Below, piece by piece: positions 1-63,187 of a stretch of 64,000 nucleotides of DNA (position 1 is its first letter; every line of letters starts with the position of its first letter). Made by a program: the position numbers and the translations under genes. The notes below the pieces were generated by a model that had not been told where the DNA came from, ran no database searches, and was given only the letters and a program-made list of their open reading frames with translations. The stretch covers positions 47,430,001 through 47,494,000 of the forward strand of contig OZ249436.1 of assembly GCA_965235115.1 (NCBI GenBank), written 5' to 3'. The DNA comes from Laetmonice hystrix. Lineage: Eukaryota.

Positions 1-202
1 ACATCTTTTACATACTCAATCTACAATTTACTTCCCAAAGCACCACGACATCCAGTATAATCAGTCTGTTCCATGGATGTTACGAGATGTTACTCAACTG
101 AAAAATTACTAGGTCAGCTGTTCCCAACATTCCCGCAGGCGTAGATGACCCCTAAAGGAGACCTAGGGATCAGAGGTCATGTCAAGGTCAGAATGGTCCT
201 AC

Positions 203-367
203 CTCTTCGGACTCGAAGACGTGACAGAGAATCTTGGACTGTTTCTTACGGCGGAGGACCTCGTCCCCGGGGCTACAGAGGGTCCGGCGCCGGGCCATGA
301 TCACCACGATGTCTCCAATATCGGCGATGTACGAGATCGTACGGAGAGCGTGGTCCATCATGATCTC
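203..367 (-). CDS. APBA1: X11/Mint (APBA-family) exon, second half of PTB domain
   Basis: cag|GAG...GAG|gtagga, 165 nt, phase 0-0. Encodes [28 protein letters not shown]...[11 protein letters not shown], matching the X11 PTB motif [18 protein letters not shown]...ICHVFESE. The symbol denotes the family (APBA1/2, X11L, lin-10), not a specific orthologue. Confidence 0.95.
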
Positions 368-644
368 CTGCCGGTCCAAAACAACATCATCAACATCATC
401 AACATCAAACATCAAACATCAACATCAGACGTCGACATCGAACAGCCAGCTCAGAAAGTCAGTACTGAAACGGACCAATTTGTCTGTGTCAATTCTCACA
501 TATAAATGTTTTCCTTTAATAATATCTTGGTAGAATCAATCAAATTTCTCACATATTTTTACAAGAACAAGGAACCCTATCCTGAACTCCCAAGACCCCC
601 CACACCCCCACCCCACACCCCGATTGCTTTCTAATCTATAACAC

Positions 645-897
645 ACGGGGAAAATCCCACTTATCTCGGCGTCATACCGGGGCGAAACTTTCTAAGTCCA
701 ATATTCATCTGTCAGGAATAGGTAATTCCAATGGACCAGCCAGCATGGTGAGCATGGTCAGTGACCGGTAAAATATCACACGACCATTCCTCCGTAATGA
801 TGGCTGTACCATTGACATTACCTACTCCTGATAGTAGCCAACAGAACCTAGAATATTTCCGGCAGGTATGACGCCGCGGTGAGTGCGATTCTCCCGT
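645..897. mobile_element. MITE-like element with long imperfect terminal inverted repeats
   Basis: Left end acggggaaaatcccacttatctcggcgtcatacc; reverse complement of right end acgggagaatcgcactcaccgcggcgtcatacc. Confidence 0.6.
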
Positions 898-1293
898 AAT
901 ATCACATACCATTCTGGGATCAATCTACTCAGTATTAAATCTTCCAGCAGTATTAAAACACCCCTATTTTCACGTATATCTTCTCTTCCTGGTAGGTTCC
1001 CATTTGAAAGGGTTGCGGAGGATGTTCGAGTTGATGAACTACTGGTGATTAGGGCATGACGAGGGGAAGGTGGGTCGTTCTGAGACGGTCCCCAGAAAAT
1101 ATATCACCGGTTTGGTCCGAGAGACAGGGTGTGTGGGGTGATATCCCCCCCCCCCCTCCCCGGCCCGGGGTGGATCCGGCTGTACCAGGGGTCAGGAAAG
1201 GTCAGGGAGTAATAAATCGTCACCCAAGCCGACTGGTGGTCATCCTGTCTTTGTAATGGAGGTGGCCCTACATCCGGTCAGGTGTGCAGCCAG

Positions 1294-1413
1294 AATTTAC
1301 CTGCTGGTAACACATTCCCTCATAAATCCGCATAATTTACCTGCTGGTAACACATTCCCTCATAAATCCGCATAATTTACCTGCTGGTAACACATTCCCT
1401 CATAAATCCGCAT
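1294..1413. repeat. 40-bp tandem repeat x3
   Basis: Unit aatttacctgctggtaacacattccctcataaatccgcat. Confidence 0.95.
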
Positions 1414-2024
1414 GATAACCCCTGCCCTAATAAATCCTCACAGTAACCCCCGCCTCATCTATCCGCATGGTAACTTTCCCACCAACTTCAGTGGTACGAA
1501 CTAAAAATATCTATCACTATTCCTCAACCCAAACATAGTCCCATACTCCCGGTCTGCAGGCTTACAAAAAATCCCTTTCTTATCTCTGCCACCAACCCTA
1601 ACCCCTAATATCGTGGGAATCTGACCATTGGGTAAATACCCCCCCCCCCCTCAGCTTAAGGTACCACCCTACGGGGTCTCTCTATGAACGTAACCCATCC
1701 AAATTGCTCTTTTGCAGAGAGATAATAGTTTGTCTATAGAAGTCGCAAACAGTATCTTAGGTTCCTAGCTTGCATGAAACCTTTGGTTTGAAAGTGTCGT
1801 CATAGGAAAATGTCCTTTTGTACATGTAGTTGTTTAATTTGAGCACATTATATAAAAGAAAGATTTGTGTTAAACTCACTACGTGTTGTACATGGAATCT
1901 TTGATTGAGACGTTAAACAAACACCAAGCAGTAACATGCAGGGGAAGCACGTGGTTTATAAACATTAGTTCATGACGAGTTCCCGGTTCCCCTGGAGCAG
2001 TTCCCTCACTGATTGTTTGCGAAC

Positions 2025-2290
2025 GATATTAGCGACTCCCAGACCCAACACTAAACCCTGAGATATTAGGGACTCCTAGACCCAACACTAAACCCTGAGG
2101 TATTAGCGACTCCCAGACCCAACACTAAACCCGGAGATATTAGCGACTCCCAGACCCAACACTAAACCCGGAGATATTAGCAACTCCCAGACCCAACACT
2201 AAGCCAGGAGATATTAGCGACTCCCAGACCCAACACTAAACCCGGAGATATTAGCGACTCCTAGACCCAACACTAAACCCGGAGATATTA
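2025..2290. repeat. 37-bp minisatellite, ~7 copies
   Basis: Unit gatattagcgactcccagacccaacactaaacccgga. Confidence 0.95.
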
Positions 2291-2380
2291 AATACACGTT
2301 CGTAAACCTACCTTTGAAACCATTGGTAAATATGGATTAGTTAAAACTCAGGAGACAAACTCCCAAACAGAGAATCCTCC

Positions 2381-2537
2381 CTGCTGAGCAAGTTATCATG
2401 TCGAGCTATAAAACACTTTGAAGCTCTACAGGAAAAGCAAAAGTGAAATTACTCAATATAACCAAAAGCTTGTTCAGCTTTCACTGAAGTAGAGCATCCA
2501 TAAAACAAATACTTCATTCATGATACTTGCTCAACAG
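2381..2537. mobile_element. Small MITE-like element
   Basis: Left end ctgctgagcaagttatcatg; reverse complement of right end ctgttgagcaagtatcatg. Confidence 0.5.
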
Positions 2538-2983
2538 ATAGGGCACTCAGGAAAAAACAGAAAGGGGAAAGTTTAGAAACAAAATCCAAACCTACCTCTA
2601 TGTTAGTAATGCCTATGGTCTAGTTTGGATGACTTAGTCTGACTGTAGCGCGCCGTTAATCATGCTTTCCGCAGGTTATTAATCCGTTATCGTGCAAGGA
2701 TTAAGCCATGATCCTAATTTCATGATACCTTACTTATCTACCCGGGTTATTTAATTTAGCATAGGTGACATTAATTTTGACCTGTGAAACTGATCCACCG
2801 ACGTTAGTGAAATCATGACCAAAATAATGTGGGAAAACGTGACTAAAATACCGTGCAAGCGGTTTGATGTCCAATACACTGTGTGTGAGTATCTGCAACA
2901 TCTGCATATACGCCTAGTCTAGGAAAGCCGCGACTATTGCTTAGTGACGTGTTCGGTTAGTTAAGCCTACACTTCCACACTCC

Positions 2984-3000
2984 GTCAATAGGGGGCGCTC
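2984..3000 (+). promoter_or_regulatory. CTCF-like motif
   Basis: gtcaatagggggcgctc. Other CTCF-like cores: 5762-5776 (gccaccagggggcag), 17783-17799, 18129-18146 (minus), 39803-39819 (minus). Motif match by eye only. Confidence 0.35.
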
Positions 3001-3017
3001 ACGGTCCCCATGCCTAC

Positions 3018-3104
3018 CTGAAGATCGGTGTTGAGAACCATGATCTTTTCCATAGAGACAAACAGATCCACTTCCGTGCTTGGCTGACTCTCGCCCTCTG
3101 GTGC
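3018..3104 (-). CDS. APBA1: X11/Mint PTB exon, copy B (APEGESQPSTEVDLFVSMEKIMVLNTDLQ)
   Basis: ctctctctag|GCA...CAG|gtaggc, 87 nt, phase 0-0. Matches the X11 motif APEGESQPxTEVDLFIST. Confidence 0.93.
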
Positions 3105-3164
3105 CTAGAGAGAGGTGTGAGAGATAAGGTCAAAGGTCAAGACAGAGAGAGCGTCCCTACATAC

Positions 3165-3251
3165 CTGTAGGTTGGTGTTAAGCACCATGATTTTCTCGGT
3201 TGAAACAAAGACGTCGACGTCAGAGCCCGGTTGATTTTGTTCGTCCGGCCC
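3165..3251 (-). CDS. APBA1: X11/Mint PTB exon, duplicated copy A (GPDEQNQPGSDVDVFVSTEKIMVLNTNLQ)
   Basis: gttctgccaccag|GGG...CAG|gtatgt, 87 nt, phase 0-0, open frame. Aligns without gaps to copy B. Confidence 0.85.
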
Positions 3252-3471
3252 CTGGTGGCAGAACACAGAGTTAAAAATACACAGTTCATCTCACGGGTTG
3301 GATCCTCACCATAATAACACACCTTTATCTGGGACACCGGTGTGTGATCTTTTGGTTTTTCTTTTTGTGTGTTTAATTTTTCTGTTTGTTTCGGGCTCTT
3401 TTTGAGTTTCTGTTTTGTTTGTTTCTAGTGGGTGTTCTTTAGCTTTCCTCCGAGTACAGGCAACAGGTAAT

Positions 3472-3974
3472 CAGGGCCTAGTTCTTAAAATCTTAAACCT
3501 TTCTTAAAGGGAAAGTATTGCATCCCATTTTCCTGAGATAACCTGTCCTGTCTGCACAGAAATATATCATATTACAACGATCTATCTCATTATGTGTCGA
3601 TTTACTTGTAATAATAGTGAAACTGGAGGACCAATCGTGCCATTCTTGATTGGACGTTAAAAAACATGATCGCCGTTTACCCCAGCTTGTTTCCCTGCCT
3701 GGGAGTACCGGTCCGACTAAACACCAAAACCGACCGAAACTGACCAAAACCGACCGAAGCCGACGACTTCTATGCCATCTGGATATGCCAAGGTCGGTTT
3801 CGATCGTTTTCGGTAAATTCACTCGGATTCGGCGTTTTCTAACACAAGATTGGTAATTGGTTCTCTTTAAGTTTAAGCTTACACATAACGTTGATTCTGA
3901 TTGGCTGCATGGTCTGCTACAATCAGAAATCTAAGTTTAAGCCAGATATTATATTATTTTTAAACTAGGCCCTG
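3472..3974. mobile_element. Harbinger-like non-autonomous element
   Basis: Perfect terminal inverted 12-mer CAGGGCCTAGTT / AACTAGGCCCTG. Internal tctgattggc...aatcaga palindrome and aaaaccgaccgaa sub-repeats. Superfamily assignment is inference. Confidence 0.6.
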
Positions 3975-6309
3975 GTATTGCAGTTTTTTTGGTGTGGGGG
4001 TCCTTTTTATTTGTTTTCGCTCATATCCACATATCCACCTTTTCACAGAGAATTAGGTCAGATTTAGTCAAACATTGTAATGTGGCGAACTGATTGACCA
4101 GAGTGTCTGAAGGAGAGAGAGGTGAGTAAAGAACGCTGCAGGTGTCCCCTACAGGTGCGAACAGGTGTGAGAGATCCACATACCGTGTCATACCATCAAT
4201 TAAATCACTGTCACTAATTAACATGTTTTCTTCACTTCATAAGGGACATCATACATATCATCGCCAACAACAGGTCTAGGTATTTCATTAGTAAGCAGAG
4301 AATATGCATCTAGTGTTATATAAACTGTGCATGTATCTCATATCTGTTACAAATGAGAGAAAACTATTTTTATTTCAACTACCGCTTTAACATTTTTAAG
4401 AATGTTAATGAGGCGAATGAGTTGGAAACAATCACAAAAAGGTATCTGTGTGTCGAAGGTCGGAATTTCAAAGAATTAGACAATATATCTAAATCAGTTG
4501 TAAATTTTAATCGGCATTCAAACAGCCCGACTCGAGAACCAATATGGCCTATTAGTTTTATTGACCGCCAAAGGTACAATTTCCTTTGAGGTACAACATT
4601 TAGAGACATTTAGACGTCATAGCATGACCTACGCATGCAGACTGGTGCTGGTAGTAATGCTACAACATCAAGAATGGTACAAGTTGTCCACCACCACCAC
4701 CGCCGTGAGGCCGAGATGCCATCACTCGAGTATTGTGTATATAGGAGTCTGTCGCTCTAACTTGGAGTAGAGTAACAGTAGTAGTGCAGTGACAGAACAA
4801 TTTATAGCAGGCTAATGGACCATCGCGTATCAACATATTGGATCTGATGCTGGCTGTCAGTGCCACACAGTTGCCCGATATAACTCTCATATCAGCATCT
4901 ACTCGAGTTACGTCATTACGTCATGCATTGGTGCAAAAATTACTCCTATAGAGGATTACTTCTGGCTGTTTTACTATGGAGTTATAAACATTCCATTTCA
5001 AGGTCAAATGTTAAGTGATCTTTACGTCATAACCTCAAACAAGGTTTGCATGACCAGAACGGAATTTGAAATCACTGCAGGCCAAAACCATAAACATGCA
5101 TGGTATAGGGTTGTAAACCAGGAGATAATTTCTATCCGGCTTTTAAACCAAACTTATCAAGATTACACAAAATCTAAAATAGCCACACACATTTATCATG
5201 CTTGCATGGCAAAGCAAGCATAACTGACTGTAGAATGGTGGTTTTTCATCAACTTGTTCGGGTTTTTTTCTCTCCTGTCTCTTTTTAATCGTAAAATTCA
5301 TGTTTGGGTGTTGGCCGCTCAGTACGTATCGAGTATAATACGATCTAGTCATGCAACAGTAGTGACCTCTAGTGGTGAACACAAGAATTATGTTGATTGT
5401 TAGAAGCGTATGGACATGAATAGAGAAAAAGACATTGTAGCATTGTGAAGGTCGTACCTTTTCTATACCCATAAGTTCATTCTGCCAATTGTATGGTATG
5501 CAATGTTAATAATACAGAGTTAAAATTAATAATAGTCACATCAGGTTACCATAGCAATGTCATTAAATATGTATCACATGTTTCACTGAAGCAGGGTCAC
5601 TACGCGTTCTATGTCTAACAACGAAACAAGACATCAGGTGAAAGAAATACTGAACAGACATCGAAAGTCAAAGTGCACTTATGAGACAGAACCCTGACAC
5701 ACGCGGTACACGCCCAACACACCACGTCTTCAAGCAAGGCAGTCTAGTAAACCTCCCACACGCCACCAGGGGGCAGTCTCAGCCGGTCTATGGGAACGAT
5801 ATGGGAATTTTTGACCGGAATTTTTCACCGCCGGGGTAGCTGGGGTTGTATTAACCGTATTTAATACAAGATCCGTAATTTAATGAAGACGGGTCATGGA
5901 GAGGTCTAGGACGTAAAGATCTGTAGGCGTCGTGCCAAGGATCTAGAAACGAGTTCAATCACTCATTTTGTTATATTCTAATATTTGAATAAACAACTAA
6001 TTAAATAATAACCCTTTCCTCCTTCTATCAATTCATTTTTTCCTCCCTTTCCTCCTTGCTACCGTCCTTCCTTCCCTTGAGTTATATATAAAGTTGCACT
6101 TTACCTCTGAGCTAAAACTGTTAAGAACTCAACACGTCGTCTAAAGAACGATATACTGACCTACCCCAACTATTCTTAATAATTCGTCTTGGCGCTAAGA
6201 CAGGACACTCCCAAAAACTCTCAGCCCCAGCTCGTCCATCTTAGTTTTACCAAATTCGCGCCTCTTCCCATAAACTACATGTTTCTGAGATCAGTATCAT
6301 TTTATCTGA

Positions 6310-6744
6310 GGCCTGGTTTTAACTGAACACTACGTAACAACATATCGGATACCGGCGGAGGGATTTCGTCAAAGTGAGCATGCTATAGTTCTAACCACAT
6401 CAGAACGTCACATACGTCATCGGGAAGACAATCCTCGCCGGCAAATAGCGCGCTGTCAAGTCAACCAGTTCAGACCAAGAGAGGGATCGAACTAAAACAT
6501 GGGAAGTCGTGGGTCTCTACCACTCGTAGTTAATTACTCGACACGACAGACACAGTCTGCACGGAGATCAGACAGCGGGGACATGCAGCCAGTAACACCA
6601 GAACAAAGGAAAAGGTTCAACGGATTGGCACAACTTTCAAACAAGTCTTCGATACAGAGGTGTGGCCAGGCCGCTTACCATAGCGAGCTGATAGGCCCTC
6701 TTAGGATAAAAACAGAAAGGCGGATTCACAGTTAAACTAGCGCC
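6310..6744. mobile_element. Harbinger-like MITE with degenerate TIRs
   Basis: Left end ggcctggttttaactg; reverse complement of right end ggcgctagtttaactg. Confidence 0.4.
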
Positions 6745-7041: not shown

Positions 7042-7110
7042 TTCAACTTCGTTCAAAATTTCTTTTCCCTTAGAGAGCTCTTCCTTTTCCTTTTCCTTGA
7101 AGAGCTCGTT
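7042..7110 (-). CDS. Candidate cassette exon of X11/Mint (NELFKEKEKEELSKGKEILNEVE)
   Basis: tgtgtttgttttcag|AAC...GAA|gtaaga, 69 nt, phase 0-0, purine/GAA-rich. Lies between the GRIK exon and the APEG/GPDE exons. No homology recognised. Confidence 0.5.
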
Positions 7111-8916
7111 CTGAAAACAAACACAGCATTGTCTACACCATCAAACGTGGCATCTTTCTCCAGGTATCCATCGTCAACATTTGGCGGTTTGACCTTCTTC
7201 AAAATACTTTAGTGCCAAAAATTAATGCCGAGCAAATAATCTTTCAAAAAGTGAAAATTGATGCGAATTGAAATGCGCTGGAAAGAAAGTTGATCGATTC
7301 CCAGACCACTGTGTGCCAAAGGAAGCAGCAGGGTGTTTTTTTGGATGGATTTTTTAATATAAATTTTTGTTAAAATAGATGTACACATGTAACGTGTCAT
7401 GCAGGTGCAAGCTCTTCAGGATGCTATGTGTCAATCAATTTCTCGGTGCCTGGATACGGCGGATGTTCGGGTGAGAACGAGGCTGATCGCCACCACTGGG
7501 GGCGTCTGGGCGTGGTTTTGTCAGGGTGATTGACGTGGAAGAACAGAAGAAAGTAGGACGTAAGGAACGAATGAAAGAAGACAGAAGTCAGGAAAAAATG
7601 GATAAATGAAGATACCTGGTACTGTCTACCAAAATGCATGACACCCAACGTCTGCACAAACAAGAGAGGTAGGGTAGACATTGGTCACTGTTACACACCA
7701 ACTAGATCATCTTCACGAAACCAGGGCCCAGAGTTAGGCAACTGGTCCAATCCCATCCAAATCATTACTAACCAGTCGTAAAACTCCACATTTAAACTCC
7801 CCACTCACTTTATCCAACACTCACTGTTACTCTTTCATCTGATTGACAAGTTTCCAAGCATCTTTATAATATTTGTTTGCACGTGAAAAGAAGAGAAAAC
7901 CTGTGGTTCTACAGTTACGTCATACAGAGTAAGCAACATCAGACTTTCATGATGTGCCCACAAACTTTCAAATATAGTCCATGCACTTGCACAGGAGAAA
8001 AAAAAACTGACGCAAAAACGACTTGGAAAAAATACATATTTGTGATTTTACAGAAACCGGGTGGAAAAACACAAGTGTCACACGAGAATCGTAAATAATG
8101 CATTACGTCAAAATTACTACGAAAGGTGGATCGACAATTACTGAAAACAACTACGAGGAGGAACATGTTAAGACTTCAACAATCTTTTTCATTAATCAAA
8201 CTTGGTTCACAAATCAAAAACTACGCCTGATCATTATATCTATACGCGGCTAGGAACGTTTAACTCTGAGAATCAAGATTTTAACAATTGTTTGAGGTCT
8301 TAAAAAAAGGAGTTCTAAGAATTGGAATGGAACTAACACAATTACATTATCTATATAATACTATATTAACACAGACACACAAAGTTTATACACATCATGG
8401 GAAATTCATTGTATCGTGTGCAGCTACTTCATGATAATGTACATATACAATGTATGTTAGTCGTCCAGTAACATCCCAACTACTGTTTTACGACAATTTC
8501 AATTCATTGCAATAGCTTTAATTTTTGACTTATTCTCTATTATTTCATCAATTTGATGCAGAAGAAGCAGCCTCTTTTGGCAGTTTGTTATAATGTTCTG
8601 TCAATTTGAAATCAAAACATAAAAAGTGATATGGCGTGAATTATGTTGTGTCAATGCATTTGTAAATAGTCAAGCTAACATATGTTTTAACACGAGATTC
8701 GATTCTTATTCCATTAATTACCGGTATCAAAACGTCATTATGGTTGGGATTAAATTTGATCTGATATTAAAGTATTCAGTTCCCATTGAATCAATCAGCA
8801 GTATTATAACAGTATCTTCCATAAAATCCACGCTGTCAATATATCCTTCTCTATCTCAGAATCAATTCATGCAAATATTCAATGACGTCACAATAACGTC
8901 GTGACGTATAACGTCG

Positions 8917-12084: not shown

Positions 12085-12236
12085 CTTGATCCTGCCGACA
12101 GCCTCCTGGGCTTGCATCATACGCATGGCCTTGGATGGGGCACCCTCCGAGATGAGCTGGGTTGACCCGAGGTAGCGGGCACGGAACAGCACACCCTCTA
12201 TTAGAACTGTGTTACCGTCAACATCACGGAGCGTCA
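12085..12236 (-). CDS. APBA1: X11/Mint exon, start of PTB domain
   Basis: ccctcggcag|TG...AAG|gtgata, 152 nt, phase 1-0. Encodes [50 protein letters not shown], with the YLGSTQL and RMMQAQEAV signatures. Confidence 0.95.
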
Positions 12237-14891
12237 CTGCCGAGGGTAAAGGGTAAAGGTCAGGGGTCAGCACAAACATCGGCGGGAGGAGTCAAGGAAC
12301 GGAAATATCCGAGGTGTTCCGACCGCTGGAACCACTGGCGGTCGAACAATCAATGATGTGGCACTGTGTACTTAGGGGTGACAATGGGGTGGGCATCCAG
12401 AATGACTATTGGAGGGTGAGGAGTAGCTCAACATGATTAGGGTGAGATTAAGTATTAACTAATCTAATAATATTGGGAAAATGGACCAAAATTGTACTTA
12501 TAAGAGATATATGATGAAGATATGGATGAAACACAAATTATCCTTCTAACGTCAGTGTGCTATAAATAAATACCTATAGGCCTACTACAGTTGTATAAAA
12601 ATAATAAAATTGATAATTCTATTAAAATTAAATCTAAAGGTTTACGTTGAAAAGGGAAGACTTTTCCTTGGTTCCCCTTTACCACTTTACATTGAATAGC
12701 TTTAATAATCAAAGCATAATCAAAGAAGACCTCAACCACACCCAACATAGTCTTTTAGAGTAATGTCCGTGTTTGCCACCAGACGGCGTAACAGTAGTTC
12801 ACCCAACTCCAGCCATCTCCCCAATATACTGACAGTCTTATATCTCTACAAGACCCCTGAGGTTTACTTAGTCCATGTCTCATTCTAAACTTCCCATCTA
12901 TCCAATTAAAATTAAATCATGAAATTAATGTTCTCTTAGCAATAAACACTACACCATGTCAGAAACATGTGAAATCTTGACAAGTAATGTTTAAGTAAAT
13001 AACAAACAAACAAACAAGAAACCGGCAAGCACAACAAAGGAAACTATGTTAATATCATCTTTAATGTATGTATGTACAACTTACCATTGAGAGAGAGAGA
13101 CCGGAGAGGGCGTTAAAAAAAGATCAGTGAGAACTCAGACTATGCAGGTCAGCAAGCCACATGGCAGCCATATTTATATACGCACACACCAGTAGCAGCC
13201 GAAATTCACACAACTCACACTGCTCAGCGTAACACTCACACTCTGCCGTCAAGCAACGGAATTAAGTTCTTTCTTTTCACAGCGCCCTCTCGCGAGTGTT
13301 GTGTGTATGTATGGAGGTTTCTCTAACGTTCATCTTTCAATTATTAAACATAACATAAGGGCAACACACATCATTAGAGATGCTTTATTACCAAATGGGC
13401 AGTTCAATCGTGTATACTGAGCAAGAGCAGTTGAATTTCTGCGTTTCTGGGAATATTATGTAAGTAGAGCTATTAATGTTTTACATATGCGTGTTAAGTA
13501 CATTGGTTAACCAGATCCAAGAGAGTAATCAGTTTTATCTTGATAATGAGTCTCTAGACAAAAATGCATTGTTTACTGTGAACTACTTCATATTCTAGGT
13601 CTACTCTTGCAAGAAAACAGTTGGGACGGAATGGGTAGTTCGCTATAGATCCTCCAGGCGGCGACCGATATCTCTGTCATGATTGGTCAGTTCAGCTTCA
13701 GTCAAAATCGACGACCAAGGCCGCTGGTTACGACACGAATGGTTAGACATTAATGATATATAATTAAAAACTTAGAAAATATGTCATAGTCGGCGAATGT
13801 CAATTTGTATAAATACACTGGCTGGATTGGAAAATTATCAGTGAGTTTCACTAATCATCTGGATGATCGACCAATCGGGTTTTTCCCACCATTCTCGGGT
13901 AGGCCTACGGACCCGACCGATGTGGCCAGCAATAAAAATGATTGTTTGTCTTCCTTTGTTTCGTCCCGAGAATTGACAGTAACAATGACAGTCAAACAGG
14001 AGTCTAGTGAGGGATTTATCCTCATCGATATTTCCCCTCATTATTGAAAAGATTTACCTAAGTTTAAAAAAGAGAGAACCCCTCATAACGGCTCTGAATC
14101 AAACATTTTCCGAGGCTCCCTTTCTGTGTCGTTTATTCACATGAGGGATTGGATCGTGCAGTGGGGTGTCTTGTCTGGATCTCCTGCTGGTCCAACAGAC
14201 ATCCCAAATATCGGAGCCGAAATCTGGGCTCAGATCCGTCCGACTGTTTTCACTGGCTACCAGCAGACACCAGACTTCAGCATCTAGCCTTCGCCCTGTC
14301 TGTGACGGCGAGTGATTGTAAATACAGAGGTTATCAGATGCCGCCGGAACGGCCCCGCGCCGTCGGCCCACGGGGGGCGTTTCGTCAGGTGTATTATTTT
14401 ATTGACAACCCGACGACAACCACTTCCGCTTACAATGGACTCGATCTGGGTCTTATCTGGGTCATTCCCAGCCACTGTCTGCGAGTCGAATCTACCATCG
14501 GGCACGGCAAGCTAAATGATGGTCAGTCAAAGGCCAGTTCTCAGGTCATGACTGGTCAGTATTGGGGGGTTAGCAAGCCGACAGTAGTCACCGACTGACC
14601 AGCAGTGAGCCCTGAGTGGCCAATGGCCTGAGTGGGTTTAGTCACGTGACATGTAGCACCTTGTTAAATACATCCGGGTCCCAGCTGGTCTTCACTGGTT
14701 TCAAAACGAACTCCCACCCGCTCCCTGCGGTGGTAGATTCATGGATTCCATGACAACTAGTTCCCAGAATGCAATATCCGAACCAACCTCCCCCTTCTGT
14801 TCCTAGAAATGAGACTAAATCGTTCATGGCGTGCAGGAGAATCGACTACCACTCGTTAATTCATTCCTCATTCATTCCAGAATGATTCTAC

Positions 14892-59860: not shown

Positions 59861-62800
59861 ATATATGTATATATGTGCTGTATTTGTACCTTGTATGCAC
59901 CCAGTGAAAGACTTTCACCCATGATTATGTATACCTCATTGCGTTCTCAAACTAAGATTCGTAAAACCCTAGATGAAGAAATTGACAAAACGAACTACCC
60001 GTATATGAAGACTCGACTGTATAAAATATCTCACGTATCTTACCAATGTGTACTAATGAACAAGTGAACATATCAGCGGAAGAGCTCTCAATGATGAAGG
60101 GATTTAAAATTATGCATCTCAACGTCAGAAGTTTACTACCTAAACTCGATAGCATTGTACATAACTTTACCCCATACGTGAACATTCTGTGCCTGAGTGA
60201 AACATGGTTGTCACCTGAATTACCATCATCAATGGTACAGATTAAAGGATACCAGATAATTCGTAATGATAGAGTTAACAAAAGGGGAGGGGGTACTTGC
60301 ACTTATGTTAAAGAAGATATAAATTTCCAGGTAGTAACCCAAATTTCGAATTGTCACATAGAACTGCAAGTCCTTATTATCAAGGGTAATAATGCTAAGA
60401 AAATAATCCTATTAAACTGCTATAGACCACCTAAGGGAACCCCAGGAATAGCTATCGAAACAATTAGAGAATGTATAAACACTATTAATGATTTACATAA
60501 ATGTGAAGTGGTCATCATTGGAGATCTTAACCTAGATTATTCGGATAAAAAAGCCGATTCGTATAAACTACTTGCTGGCTTAGAAGATGACTATACACTA
60601 AAACAAATTATAGAAAACGATACCCGAATTCATCTTAAAGGTAGTACCTTAATAGATGTAGTTATTACCAATATCAAGAACATATTTAGCTCGGGATGCA
60701 TAAACTACAATATTAGCGATCACCTACCTGTATATATTATCAAAAAAAGGAAACATACCGTTAGAGATAAGAAGTTTATTTATTGCAGACGTTTTAGCAA
60801 CTATAATAAGGAGCTATTCCAAAGTAGATTAAAAAATTTAGATTGGACAGTCCTTGATCTACTGGAAGATATAAATGACATGTGGGATATGATCTACAAA
60901 GGTATTGAGTTTGAAATTGACCGCATGTGCCCCTATAGAAAGGTTAAAGTTGGAAGTCAACGACCCGAGTGGTTAAATAGGGAACTAACAGAGTTTGAGC
61001 TGCAAAGAGATATTTTATTTAGGATTTACCGTAGAAGTAAAACCCAATATAACTATGATAGGGCCTGCCATGCAAGGAGAACCTACAATAAACTAGTCAG
61101 AGATGCTAAGCAAAACTATATGTTGAATAAATTAAAAGAACACGAAAAAGACCAAAAGAAATTCTGGAAAGATATTAAAACTTTAATACCGGAGATGTCA
61201 AATATTAAAATCGATGAAATACGTAATCCAGTTAATGGTAACATGTGTAAAGATAAAGAGGCGACGGAACTGATGAATGACTATTTTATTAATATAGGAA
61301 AGGATCTAGCCGACCGACTACCACATCCCTCGGCAATCAACAGACCTACAGTCCAGAAGAGCAATGCAGTATTAGCAGACCTTGGCAAATTCACAGTCGA
61401 CAGTCTTTGTAATATCTTGAATGAAATCTCTTTATCAAAGTCATCGGGATTAAATAGAGTTAGCACGAGAGTCCTAGTCGATGCATTCAATGCAATACCA
61501 GACATCATTGTTAGGCTCTACAACTACTCGCTGGAAAACTCCCAAATTCCTACGGCATTTAAAGTGGCTAGAGTTACCCCAGTACCTAAAAAAGGAGATC
61601 CAACGGATTTGAATAACTTAAGACCGATCTCTAACACTCCCCTGCCATCAAAGATCTTGGAAAAACACGTAAACAAAATTGTCTACAACTATATGGAAAG
61701 CAATAACCTCTTTTTATCTTCACAAAATGGATTCAGGAAGGGAAAGTCAACAACTGGTGCGGTCAACAAAGTTGTAAACCAAATATTTGAACATAAGAAT
61801 AGTGGCCAATACAGCATTATAGTTTTCATGGATCTGGCAAAAGCATTTAATTGTATCAACCATGATATCCTAGCCACTAAATTAGAAAATGTGGGTATAA
61901 TATATAAAAGCAAATCATGGATAATAGAATACTTAAAAGATAGGCAGCAATTTGTAAGACACAATGAAATTGAATCAGAATGTAAAGTTATCAATTACGG
62001 CATACCGCAAGGTACAATTCTTGGCCCGTTGATCTACTTATTATATGTCAATGACATATTGGACTCCGATATAAAATCAGACTTAAGTGCATTTGCCGAC
62101 GACACAGCTATGGTAGCACACAGTTTTAGTTTGCCAGAATTGGTAACACAAATTACTGACGACATTAATAAACTGAATACTTGGTTTATAAACAATAAAC
62201 TTACAGTTAATGTAAAGAAAACGAAATGTATGCTTTTTGGTAGAAGCAGTGACGAAGATAGAAATATCCATATCAGTATTAATAACAACAATCTAGAATT
62301 TGTTAACAAATTTACATATTTGGGGATAGTTATTGACAATAAACTTCAATTCCATCATCACATTAAAAATTGTATCAAGAAAGCCGGACACAAGGTATAT
62401 ATGTTATCTAAATTAAGACGATATGTAAATAAAACGACTGCATTAACTATATTCAAATCAATGATTTTACCATATCTCGAATATGGTAACATTTTTAACG
62501 GGACGTGTACAGAATATTATAAACACAAACTGCAAGTAATACAAAACAATGGGTTAAAGATTGCATTGAACAAGGATAGATTATTCAATACTTTTCAGCT
62601 ACACCAGGAAGCAAAGTTACTCCCATGTAAATATAGACGACTAATTATGATGCAAAAGATTACCTTTTTTGAGGTACTTGAAAACACTTCCAGAATAGCT
62701 CAATCAAACATTACAAGAGCACATGATGCAGTTCTATTAGAAGTACCCAGACCTAGGAGTGAGCATTTTAAGAAATGTAATAGCTACACTGGGCCTACAC

Positions 62801-63187
62801 TTTGGAACGAACTACCAGTTTACATGAGAAACCTAAAGGACAAGAAGGAATTTAAAGTAGAGATTAAAAAATATTATAATAATATGTACATGAATGAAAG
62901 ACACTAGGGGGAACAAGATAGATTTATCTCGTAAGAAGCTCTAAGAAGCATGGGTTAAATTGTATACGAAAGTGAATGTGTAAGTGCAGAAATATTATAT
63001 GTAATTGTTAAGTGCTAAGAAGGATGTGTAAAACTATATACTGTACATACAAGGTAATGTAGAATGTATGGGTGAAAGTGTATAATACGTTAATGTATCA
63101 CAGGGCCCTACATTAATGGCGGCTGACAAGTCGAGTGGGTTCCCCTGTCAAAATATGCATAATAAAAAAAAAAAAAAAAAAAAAAAA
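59861..63187 (+). mobile_element. Non-LTR retrotransposon (L2/CR1/Crack-like LINE), ORF2 plus 3' UTR and poly-A, no recognisable ORF1
   Basis: Intact APE-RT ORF, ~250-nt 3' UTR ending AATAAA/A24 at 63161-63187, satellite on both sides. The 5' boundary is approximate; no TSD seen. Confidence 0.92.
60046..62907 (+). CDS. LINE ORF2: AP endonuclease plus reverse transcriptase, 953 aa, uninterrupted
   Basis: APE motifs HLNVRSL, LSETWL, RNDR..RGGG, IGDLNLD, SDHLPV. RT motifs LRPIS, QNGFRKGKST, DLAKAFN, GIPQGTILGP, AFADDT, YLGIVID. Confidence 0.97.
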   Translation: MCTNEQVNISAEELSMMKGFKIMHLNVRSLLPKLDSIVHNFTPYVNILCLSETWLSPELPSSMVQIKGYQIIRNDRVNKRGGGTCTYVKEDINFQVVTQISNCHIELQVLIIKGNNAKKIILLNCYRPPKGTPGIAIETIRECINTINDLHKCEVVIIGDLNLDYSDKKADSYKLLAGLEDDYTLKQIIENDTRIHLKGSTLIDVVITNIKNIFSSGCINYNISDHLPVYIIKKRKHTVRDKKFIYCRRFSNYNKELFQSRLKNLDWTVLDLLEDINDMWDMIYKGIEFEIDRMCPYRKVKVGSQRPEWLNRELTEFELQRDILFRIYRRSKTQYNYDRACHARRTYNKLVRDAKQNYMLNKLKEHEKDQKKFWKDIKTLIPEMSNIKIDEIRNPVNGNMCKDKEATELMNDYFINIGKDLADRLPHPSAINRPTVQKSNAVLADLGKFTVDSLCNILNEISLSKSSGLNRVSTRVLVDAFNAIPDIIVRLYNYSLENSQIPTAFKVARVTPVPKKGDPTDLNNLRPISNTPLPSKILEKHVNKIVYNYMESNNLFLSSQNGFRKGKSTTGAVNKVVNQIFEHKNSGQYSIIVFMDLAKAFNCINHDILATKLENVGIIYKSKSWIIEYLKDRQQFVRHNEIESECKVINYGIPQGTILGPLIYLLYVNDILDSDIKSDLSAFADDTAMVAHSFSLPELVTQITDDINKLNTWFINNKLTVNVKKTKCMLFGRSSDEDRNIHISINNNNLEFVNKFTYLGIVIDNKLQFHHHIKNCIKKAGHKVYMLSKLRRYVNKTTALTIFKSMILPYLEYGNIFNGTCTEYYKHKLQVIQNNGLKIALNKDRLFNTFQLHQEAKLLPCKYRRLIMMQKITFFEVLENTSRIAQSNITRAHDAVLLEVPRPRSEHFKKCNSYTGPTLWNELPVYMRNLKDKKEFKVEIKKYYNNMYMNERH

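What the first reader, a model, noticed from the sequence alone, without database searches (positions are those of the whole stretch)
3018..3251. Tandemly duplicated, probably mutually exclusive exons inside the X11/Mint PTB domain
Seen: two 87-nt phase 0-0 exons with intact AG/GT sites align without gaps (A: GPDEQNQPGSDVDVFVSTEKIMVLNTNLQ; B: APEGESQPSTEVDLFVSMEKIMVLNTDLQ). Many nucleotide differences coexist with a conserved hydrophobic strand pattern, which suggests both are under selection. The intron between them is only 60 nt, and its branch-like adenosines (TTGAC twice, CTTAT) lie 28-40 nt from the donor. Established: short donor-to-branch spacing enforces steric mutual exclusion, as in alpha-tropomyosin exons 2/3. 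Inference: because double inclusion keeps the frame, NMD cannot filter it. The gene would swap PTB beta-strands and the preceding loop to make two adaptor variants. I do not know of this being described for X11/Mint but cannot check the literature.
Basis: partly seen in the sequence, partly recalled or inferred. Interest (0 to 1): 0.8.

Follow-up and report, generated by a model that had tools for sequence, protein, structure and literature searches.

The report
Duplicated alternative exon in Mint/X11 PTB
An invertebrate Mint/X11 adaptor gene carries two old, still-conserved copies of the small exon for one beta-hairpin of its PTB domain, very probably used one at a time, but no RNA data exist to show it; this is a familiar kind of splice switch in a gene where it had not been described.

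Summary
On the minus strand, two 87-nt phase 0-0 exons (A 3165-3251, B 3018-3104) with AG/GT sites are separated by a 60-nt intron inside a single-copy Mint/X11 gene.

Copy A is not decaying. A related species has the same A, short intron (81 nt), B layout (loci L006/L139, two sequencing runs of one species). It is so distant that synonymous sites are saturated. Between the two species, A differs at 21 bases, 20 of them at third codon positions (p = 4e-9).

The duplication is confined to this lineage. About 115 annotated lophotrochozoan and arthropod isoforms, four relatives' contigs and 96 metagenome loci carry only a B-like exon.

A confident model places the exon on the alpha2-beta2 loop plus the beta2-beta3 hairpin. 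A and B keep the strand residues and differ in the loops, so each can stand in for the other. Either/or use is therefore the best reading (about 0.7), but it is not shown. The only probable RNA run of this animal has no contig on this gene.

The steric mechanism is uncertain: a 60-nt intron is unusually short here, but the relative's is 81 nt.

This scan has noted other candidate exon pairs in this genome, but not this one.

The parts
12085..12237 (-). Upstream constitutive PTB exon (beta1 and helix alpha2, ends ...AQEAVGRIK), phase 0 at its 3' end
   Evidence: It is 80-88% identical to relatives. Model residues 11-45 form strand E11-26 and helix H31-45.
7616..7651 (-). 36-nt cassette microexon TLGVMHFGRQYQ, an insert in the alpha2-beta2 loop
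   Evidence: Searches show AG/GT sites. It is conserved in L139 (TLGEMHFGRHYQ) and in L007, L008 and L009. It is present or absent among annotated mollusc and nemertean isoforms.
7042..7110 (-). Candidate 69-nt cassette exon NELFKEKEKEELSKGKEILNEVE, phase 0-0
   Evidence: It lies in an intronic block conserved with L139, where flanking intron does not align. The frame is open in both species and AG/GT sites are present.
6679..6699 (-). Candidate 21-nt microexon RAYQLAM
   Evidence: The peptide is identical in L139 despite synonymous changes, and AG/GTAAGC sites are conserved.
5458..5481 (-). Candidate 24-nt microexon NELMGIEK
   Evidence: Conserved in L139 as NELMSIEK, with AG/GTACG sites.
3165..3251 (-). 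Exon A, the diverged copy: GPDEQNQPGSDVDVFVSTEKIMVLNTNLQ
   Evidence: The ortholog in L006 and L139 is 27/29 aa identical, with 20 of 21 nt differences at third codon positions.
3105..3164 (-). 60-nt intron between A and B: GTATGT donor, CU-rich 3' half, TAG acceptor, in-frame stop at its last codon
   Evidence: The ortholog is 81 nt. Outside the splice-site regions the two hardly align.
3018..3104 (-). Exon B, the near-ancestral copy: APEGESQPSTEVDLFVSMEKIMVLNTDLQ
   Evidence: It differs by one or two residues from the exon that all other animals carry. The ortholog in L006 and L139 is 26/29 aa identical.
203..367 (-). Downstream constitutive PTB exon (beta4-beta6, including the ISYIAD strand that binds APP), phase 0-0
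   Evidence: It is 100% identical at the aa level to L006, with 27 synonymous differences. APP hydrogen-bond partners I110, S111, I113 and D115 are reported in PMC10995209.

Best explanation
An 87-nt exon of a single-copy Mint/X11 (APBA, lin-10) gene was duplicated in tandem in the ancestor of this animal and at least one distantly related species. The exon encodes the end of the alpha2-beta2 loop and the beta2-beta3 hairpin of the PTB domain.

Both copies are still working coding exons. Each keeps the strand residues needed to build the same hairpin, so a transcript most likely carries A or B but not both. That would give two PTB variants that differ at about 11 surface positions: the loop after alpha2, the hairpin turn, and the loop after beta3. 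The APP/NPxY-binding strand is encoded by the next exon and stays the same in both variants.

Shown here:
- the duplication;
- its age, and purifying selection on both copies;
- its restriction to this lineage;
- where the exon lies in the fold.

Inferred:
- Either/or use.
- The means of exclusion. This could be the unusually short intervening intron, or regulated repression through its CU-rich tract.
- The functional effect. My guess is tuning of partners other than APP, as the 11-aa exon 6 insert in the same loop of mammalian Mint1 does for Rab6.
For: Structure and homology of the pair.

Purifying selection between species whose synonymous sites are saturated:
- Exon A: 21 differences, 1/0/20 by codon position, dN 0.03.
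- Exon B: 16 differences, 2/2/12, dN 0.07.
- Downstream exon: 27 differences, all at third positions.
- Binomial p = 4e-9 for A and 8e-4 for B.

The same layout (36-nt microexon, then A, a short intron, B, then the downstream exon) appears in two runs of the relative.

Within A, residues 12-20 match B and the ancestral exon at 7 of 9 positions, although only 1 of 9 third codon positions agrees. That points to selection for the same strand, not gene conversion.

Model (mean pLDDT 81, above 93 over this part): the exon covers loop 47-55, strand 56-62, turn 63-65, strand 66-71 and loop 72-75. The A/B differences fall in the loops and the turn, apart from exon positions 10 and 11 at the start of the first strand and position 14 inside it.

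The A-B intron is 60 nt here and 81 nt in the relative. The other introns of this gene that I measured run from 342 nt to over 40 kb. About 24 adjacent exon pairs of myosin genes in this genome have gaps of 94 nt or more.

Both A and B changed more between the two species (2/29 and 3/29 aa) than the constitutive neighbouring exon (0/55). That is usual for alternative exons.
Against: - There is no transcript evidence. No RNA run holds A or B. The probable RNA run of the same specimen (X24) has no contig on A, B or the downstream exon.
- No annotated isoform in any species carries an A-like exon, so there is no precedent from a related transcriptome.
- Double inclusion keeps the reading frame. 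It would place A in a loop that tolerates inserts of 12-35 aa in relatives.
- The relative's 81-nt intron could be spliced normally.
- I found no conserved RNA pairing that would enforce a choice.
Confidence: 0.7

Rival explanations
1. A is one more optional cassette exon of the alpha2-beta2 loop. B is always included and A is sometimes spliced in ahead of it, giving B-only and A+B isoforms but never A-only.
For: Four other conserved phase 0-0 cassette-type exons sit in the same intron. Relatives' annotated isoforms carry inserts of 12-35 aa at exactly this point. A+B keeps the frame. A 60-81-nt intron with a good donor and a strong pyrimidine tract may well be spliceable. Those cassette exons are also well conserved between the two species, so conservation of A alone does not decide the matter.
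Against: A keeps the ancestral hairpin sequence: FVSTEKIMVLNT is identical to the ancestral exon, and VD.FVSTEK is kept despite saturated third positions. A loop insert has no evident need for this. B itself has drifted at the otherwise invariant T18 (M here, Q in the relative). That is easier to understand if A covers that role in some transcripts.
Confidence: 0.15
2. Both exons are always included, giving a PTB domain with a duplicated hairpin.
For: The frame is kept. Both copies are under purifying selection. The short intron has intact signals in both species.
Against: Two copies of the same core strands cannot occupy one position in the beta-sandwich (for the fold). All other animals examined have a single copy. 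Both copies evolve faster than the neighbouring constitutive exon, which is what alternative exons do.
Confidence: 0.06
3. A is a dead or nearly unused pseudo-exon left over from a duplication.
For: No annotated or assembled transcript anywhere contains an A-like exon. A's acceptor tract looks weaker than B's.
Against: 20 of 21 substitutions between the orthologous A copies are at third codon positions, while the flanking introns no longer align. Frame and splice sites are intact in both species.
Confidence: 0.03

Closest known systems
Tandem-duplicated mutually exclusive exons (Kondrashov and Koonin 2001 type; C. elegans survey PMC4165533; human survey PMC5740500)
   Same: The exons are adjacent and homologous, with the same length and phase and intact splice sites. 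Both are conserved. They are 3n in length with a very short intervening intron. In C. elegans, 10 of 29 clusters are 3n, and 5 of those have introns too short to be excised.
   Different: Either/or use is not shown here. The intron is 60 or 81 nt, not the 14-30 nt of the worm cases, so it is not clearly below a minimal intron size.
Steric-hindrance exclusion as in alpha-tropomyosin exons 2/3, and the distant-branch-point case OGDH exons 4a/4b (PMC7969005)
   Same: The intervening intron is short. Candidate branch adenosines lie only 28-40 nt from the donor in this species. The intron has stayed short in both species while the neighbouring introns are kilobases long.
   Different: No branch point has been mapped. 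The relative's 81-nt intron allows roughly 50-60 nt between donor and a normally placed branch point. The minimal spacing in this animal group is unknown.
Mammalian Mint1 exon 6, an 11-aa cassette in the PTB domain (the Mint1 826 isoform, PMC3667844)
   Same: It is alternative splicing in the same alpha2-beta2 loop, directly before APEGESQP. It switches Rab6 binding by the PTB domain without changing APP binding.
   Different: That is a cassette insert, not a swap of homologous exons, and it leaves the beta2-beta3 hairpin untouched.
NUMB PTB-domain exon 3, an 11-aa insert (PMC6778778)
   Same: Alternative splicing inside a PTB domain changes partner choice; this rests only on the abstract listed.
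   Different: It is a cassette exon in a different PTB protein and has no duplicated exon.

Membership tests
Mint/X11 (APBA, lin-10) adaptor | PTB/PID domain of the X11 type | tested here: met
   The window exons are 83-91% identical to annotated APBA/lin-10 proteins. The relative P0208's PTB domain matches PDB 4DBB, 1AQC and 3SV1 at E = 1e-55 to 1e-60. PF00640 is on record for the product that is identical to the downstream exon.
Mint/X11 (APBA, lin-10) adaptor | Two C-terminal PDZ domains | tested here: inconclusive
   No PDZ exon was found in the 40 kb downstream of the window, so the next intron is longer than 40 kb. Full-length relatives do have both PDZ domains.
Tandem-duplicated mutually exclusive exon pair | Adjacent homologous exons of equal length and phase with intact splice sites | tested here: met
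   The same is true in the relative.
Tandem-duplicated mutually exclusive exon pair | Both copies kept as coding sequence by selection | tested here: met
   Orthologous comparison: A differs at 1/0/20 and B at 2/2/12 sites by codon position, with p = 4e-9 and 8e-4.
Tandem-duplicated mutually exclusive exon pair | Mature transcripts carry exactly one of the two | tested here: inconclusive
   No RNA run holds either exon. The probable RNA run X24 has no contig on this gene.
Steric-hindrance type of mutual exclusion | Donor-to-branch-point distance below the minimum the spliceosome needs | tested here: inconclusive
   In the window's 60-nt intron the candidate branch adenosines are at positions 28, 35 and 40. 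The relative's intron is 81 nt. A rough survey found no intron gap under 94 nt among about 24 myosin exon pairs. No branch point has been mapped and the species' minimum is unknown.
Exclusion by competing RNA structures (Dscam type) | Conserved docking and selector pairings in the introns | tested here: not met
   Only short inverted repeats were found, at different places in the two species. The flanking introns do not align.

The most novel reading that the evidence does not exclude
The A/B pair is a true either/or switch that works together with the four conserved cassette exons of the adjoining loop. One Mint gene could then produce up to about 32 PTB surfaces. These would retune partners other than APP (Rab6-like GTPases or lipids) while leaving the NPxY groove unchanged. 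That would be a lineage-specific, combinatorial diversification of a synaptic adaptor's PTB domain.
Probability: 0.3. Interest if true: 0.5.

Novelty: new member of a known kind. Interest (0 to 1): 0.35.

Why it matters
Mint/X11 links APP, Munc18, CASK and calcium channels in neurons. In mammals, a small insert in this same PTB loop decides whether the domain binds Rab6. A natural pair of interchangeable hairpin exons would be a ready-made experiment. It shows which surface residues of the PTB domain can vary while the fold and the APP groove are kept. The pair was kept long enough for synonymous sites to saturate, which argues that both variants do something. It also adds a clean, datable case to the record of how tandem exon duplication creates alternative splicing in lophotrochozoans, where such cases are poorly catalogued. 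It is not a new kind of mechanism.

Tried and rejected
RNA evidence:
- The look-up of sequencing runs with A, the intron and B found only three DNA-like runs of one sample.
- A second search with an actin gene of the same genome brought up X24, probably the specimen's RNA run.
- Laying X24 on window 1-6000 gave contigs only on a repeat at 3500-3760 and none on the exons.

Search for A-like exons elsewhere:
- A protein search with the A-exon open frame found no candidate.
- A degenerate DNA pattern for EKIMVLNT in metagenome contigs gave 96 Mint loci, none with a second full copy.
- The contig of the closest other relative (P0271, 98% identical) has no DNA available.

Structure:
- The first AlphaFold run, with 25 very similar sequences, was poor (pLDDT 51) and I discarded it. 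The second, with 41 more varied sequences, was good.
- I did not model A-only, B-only or A+B proteins.

Regulatory RNA structure: inverted-repeat and intron-alignment searches gave nothing conserved.

Gene conversion: the last 27 nt of A and B are unusually alike in both species (22/27 and 25/27, third positions 5/9 and 7/9). That may reflect conversion or constraint at the nucleotide level. It does not cover residues 12-20, so it cannot explain why the strand is conserved.

Minimal intron size: I have only a rough figure from myosin exon gaps. The 40 kb downstream of the window held no further Mint exon to measure.

Full report
WHAT IS THERE

On the minus strand, the window carries part of a single-copy Mint/X11 (APBA, lin-10) gene. 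Its PTB-domain exons are as follows.
- The upstream exon runs 12237-12085 and ends ...AQEAVGRIK.
- Exon A is 3251-3165 and exon B is 3104-3018.
- The downstream exon is 367-203, reading [18 protein letters not shown]....

A and B are each 87 nt, phase 0-0, with AG acceptors and GT donors. A 60-nt intron separates them. They align without gaps at 57/87 nt and 18/29 aa. Identity by codon position is 24, 25 and 8 of 29. tblastn of either exon against the whole window finds only the other one, at E = 1e-9. DNA contigs of three runs from the same sample span A, the intron and B in one piece, with no variant listed inside them.

WHICH COPY IS THE ORIGINAL

I took about 150 representatives and 120 annotated or assembled proteins, and printed this exon region for about 115 of them. 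The animals sampled include molluscs, nemerteans, an annelid (Owenia), a brachiopod and arthropods. Nearly all of the lophotrochozoans carry one exon of the form APEGE(N/S)QPST(D/E/A)VDLFVSTEKIMVLNTDLQ. The arthropod version ends in K rather than Q, with small variations.

B differs from this ancestral form only at T18M, or at one more position depending on the ancestor assumed. A differs at about 10 positions. Eight of those lie in the first 11 residues. A keeps T18 and the twelve residues FVSTEKIMVLNT unchanged. No annotated isoform anywhere contains an A-like exon.

IS COPY A ALIVE?

A search with the downstream exon found a 100% identical product in Logan contigs of ERR14368249 (L006) and ERR14368248 (L139). 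These are two runs of one species, 99.6% identical to each other.

That species is far from the window's species:
- The downstream exon differs at 27 of 165 bases, all at third codon positions.
- The introns no longer align.

Even so, it has the same layout: a 36-nt microexon, about 3.9 kb of intron, an A-like exon (GPDDQNQPGSDVDLFVSTEKIMVLNTNLQ), an 81-nt intron, a B-like exon (APAGESQPSTEVDLFVSQEKIMVLNTNLQ), 1.8 kb of intron, and then the downstream exon.

Substitution counts between the two species:
- The A copies differ at 21 bases, 1/0/20 by codon position (dN 0.03, dS saturated). Under neutrality the chance of such a pattern is 4e-9.
- The B copies differ at 16 bases, 2/2/12 (dN 0.07, p = 8e-4).

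So A has been kept as coding sequence for a long time.

HOW WIDE IS THE DUPLICATION?

More distant relatives' contigs (L002, L007, L008, L009) have a single B-like exon between the flanking exons. A degenerate pattern for EKIMVLNT in metagenome contigs returned 120 stretches. Of these, 96 are Mint loci and none has a second full copy.

The duplication therefore arose after this lineage left the other sampled lophotrochozoans and before it split from the L139 species. Other notes of this scan call the genome annelid-like; I did not test that.

WHAT THE EXON ENCODES

The first AlphaFold model was poor and I discarded it. A second model, of a relative's PTB domain built from a 41-sequence alignment, was confident: mean pLDDT 81, and above 93 across this part.

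In that model the exon corresponds to:
- the end of the loop after helix alpha2 (model residues 47-55);
- strand 56-62 (TEVDLFV);
- a three-residue turn (STE);
- strand 66-71 (KIMVLN);
- the loop leading to the next strand.

This is the beta2-beta3 hairpin of the PTB fold. The domain matches solved Mint1 and Mint2 PTB structures at E = 1e-55 to 1e-60. The strand that hydrogen-bonds the APP peptide (ISYIAD; I110, S111, I113 and D115 in the Mint2-APP complex, PMC10995209) is encoded by the downstream exon and is identical whichever copy is used.

A and B differ in the loop, at the start of the first strand (exon positions 10 and 11), at the turn (T versus M or Q) and in the loop after the second strand (N versus D). 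One conservative change lies inside the first strand (V versus L, in this species only).

WHY EITHER/OR USE IS THE BEST READING

Conservation between species does not by itself separate an alternative exon from a loop insert, because the neighbouring cassette exons are also conserved (see the next section). What does separate them is that A has kept the ancestral strand sequence since the duplication. In residues 12-20, seven of nine amino acids equal B's, while only one of nine third codon positions does. Gene conversion therefore cannot be the cause, and selection must be holding A to the same structural role. Two segments cannot both supply beta2-beta3 in one domain, so there should be transcripts in which A replaces B.

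Two further points fit this:
- Both A and B changed more between the two species (2/29 and 3/29 residues) than the constitutive neighbour (0/55).
- B has lost the otherwise near-invariant T18, while A keeps it.

I put either/or use at about 0.7. The main rival is A as an optional insert ahead of a constant B (0.15). Constitutive double inclusion (0.06) and a dead exon (0.03) are less likely.

NO RNA

No RNA run holds A or B. Two earlier notes of this scan said that one RNA data set exists for this specimen. I looked for it with an actin gene of the same genome. Run X24 has 59 million letters of contigs, comes from the same sample and holds about half of the actin words, so it is probably that data set. 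Laid on window 1-6000, it covers only a repeat at 3500-3760 and none of the exons. Splicing of this gene therefore cannot be checked with the data at hand.

MECHANISM OF EXCLUSION

For the steric idea:
- The intervening intron is very short in both species (60 and 81 nt).
- The other introns of this gene that I measured run from 342 nt to over 40 kb.
- A rough survey of about 24 adjacent exon pairs in myosin genes of this genome found no gap under 94 nt.

Against it:
- An 81-nt intron leaves some 50-60 nt between the donor and a normally placed branch point.
- The paper read (PMC4165533) puts the minimal intron at about 40 nt in C. elegans. Its steric cases have introns of 14-30 nt.
- From my own knowledge, fly introns of about 60 nt are common.
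- No branch point has been mapped in either species.

I found no conserved intronic pairing of the docking and selector kind.

The 3' half of the intron is a CU-rich tract in both species (CUCUCU and UCUU motifs). That would suit a PTB/hnRNP I-type repressor of exon B, as in other exclusive pairs. This is inference only. I would give intron shortness about even odds of being the cause.

A BUSY LOOP

- 7651-7616, TLGVMHFGRQYQ. This one is also an optional insert in annotated mollusc and nemertean isoforms.
- 7110-7042, a 23-aa exon.
- 6699-6679, RAYQLAM.
- 5481-5458, NELMGIEK.

All four would lengthen the alpha2-beta2 loop just ahead of A or B. In mammalian Mint1, the 11-aa exon 6 at this same point switches Rab6 binding by the PTB domain without touching APP binding (PMC3667844). 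By analogy, the A/B choice and these inserts probably tune partners other than APP.

NOVELTY AND VERDICT

Literature searches for mutually exclusive exons in Mint/X11/APBA found nothing. The kind of feature is well known, so this is a new member of a known kind. It is well supported as a conserved duplicated coding exon, probable but unproven as an either/or switch, and has an open mechanism. This scan has noted several other candidate exclusive exon pairs in the same genome, but not this one.

Noticed in passing
window 7616-7651, 7042-7110, 6679-6699, 5458-5481 (minus strand): Four conserved phase 0-0 cassette-type exons (36, 69, 21 and 24 nt) lie in the intron ahead of exon A. All would lengthen the alpha2-beta2 loop of the PTB domain. 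The 36-nt one is an optional insert in annotated mollusc and nemertean isoforms.
   Followed up: partly
proteins P0055, P0066, P0097, P0250 and others; loci L026, L034, L057, L063, L101: Insect Mint genes carry a second, diverged copy of the upstream PTB exon (beta1-alpha2; GTVFRLQFLGSVEVDEE...KKxMVEEAVTKIK). It is annotated either after the canonical exon or instead of it. So a different part of the same domain has been duplicated in arthropods.
   Followed up: no
L044:1279-1721 and L087:3020-3433: In two unrelated metagenome contigs, the 3' part of this same exon together with its GT donor has been copied into a short tandem array. One has 4 copies at about 110-nt spacing and the other 6 copies at 65-nt spacing. 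These are decoy donors downstream of the real exon.
   Followed up: partly
exon A/B orthologs, L139:4661-4687 and 4829-4855; window 3165-3191 and 3018-3044: The last 27 nt of A and B are much more alike than the rest, third positions included (25/27 in the relative, 22/27 here). This suggests partial gene conversion or constraint at the nucleotide level near the donors.
   Followed up: partly
window 3400-3800: A highly repeated element lies just upstream of exon A. Its DNA contig depth is hundreds of times the local level, and it is the only part of window 1-6000 covered by the probable RNA run X24.
   Followed up: no
G000:C1:47390001-47430000 (below the window): No further Mint exon (C-terminal helix or PDZ domains) lies within 40 kb downstream of exon 203-367, so that intron is longer than 40 kb.
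   Followed up: partly
window 60046-62907 (plus strand): An intact 953-aa open frame that reads like an endonuclease plus reverse transcriptase of a LINE-type retrotransposon; I did not run it against any family library.
   Followed up: no
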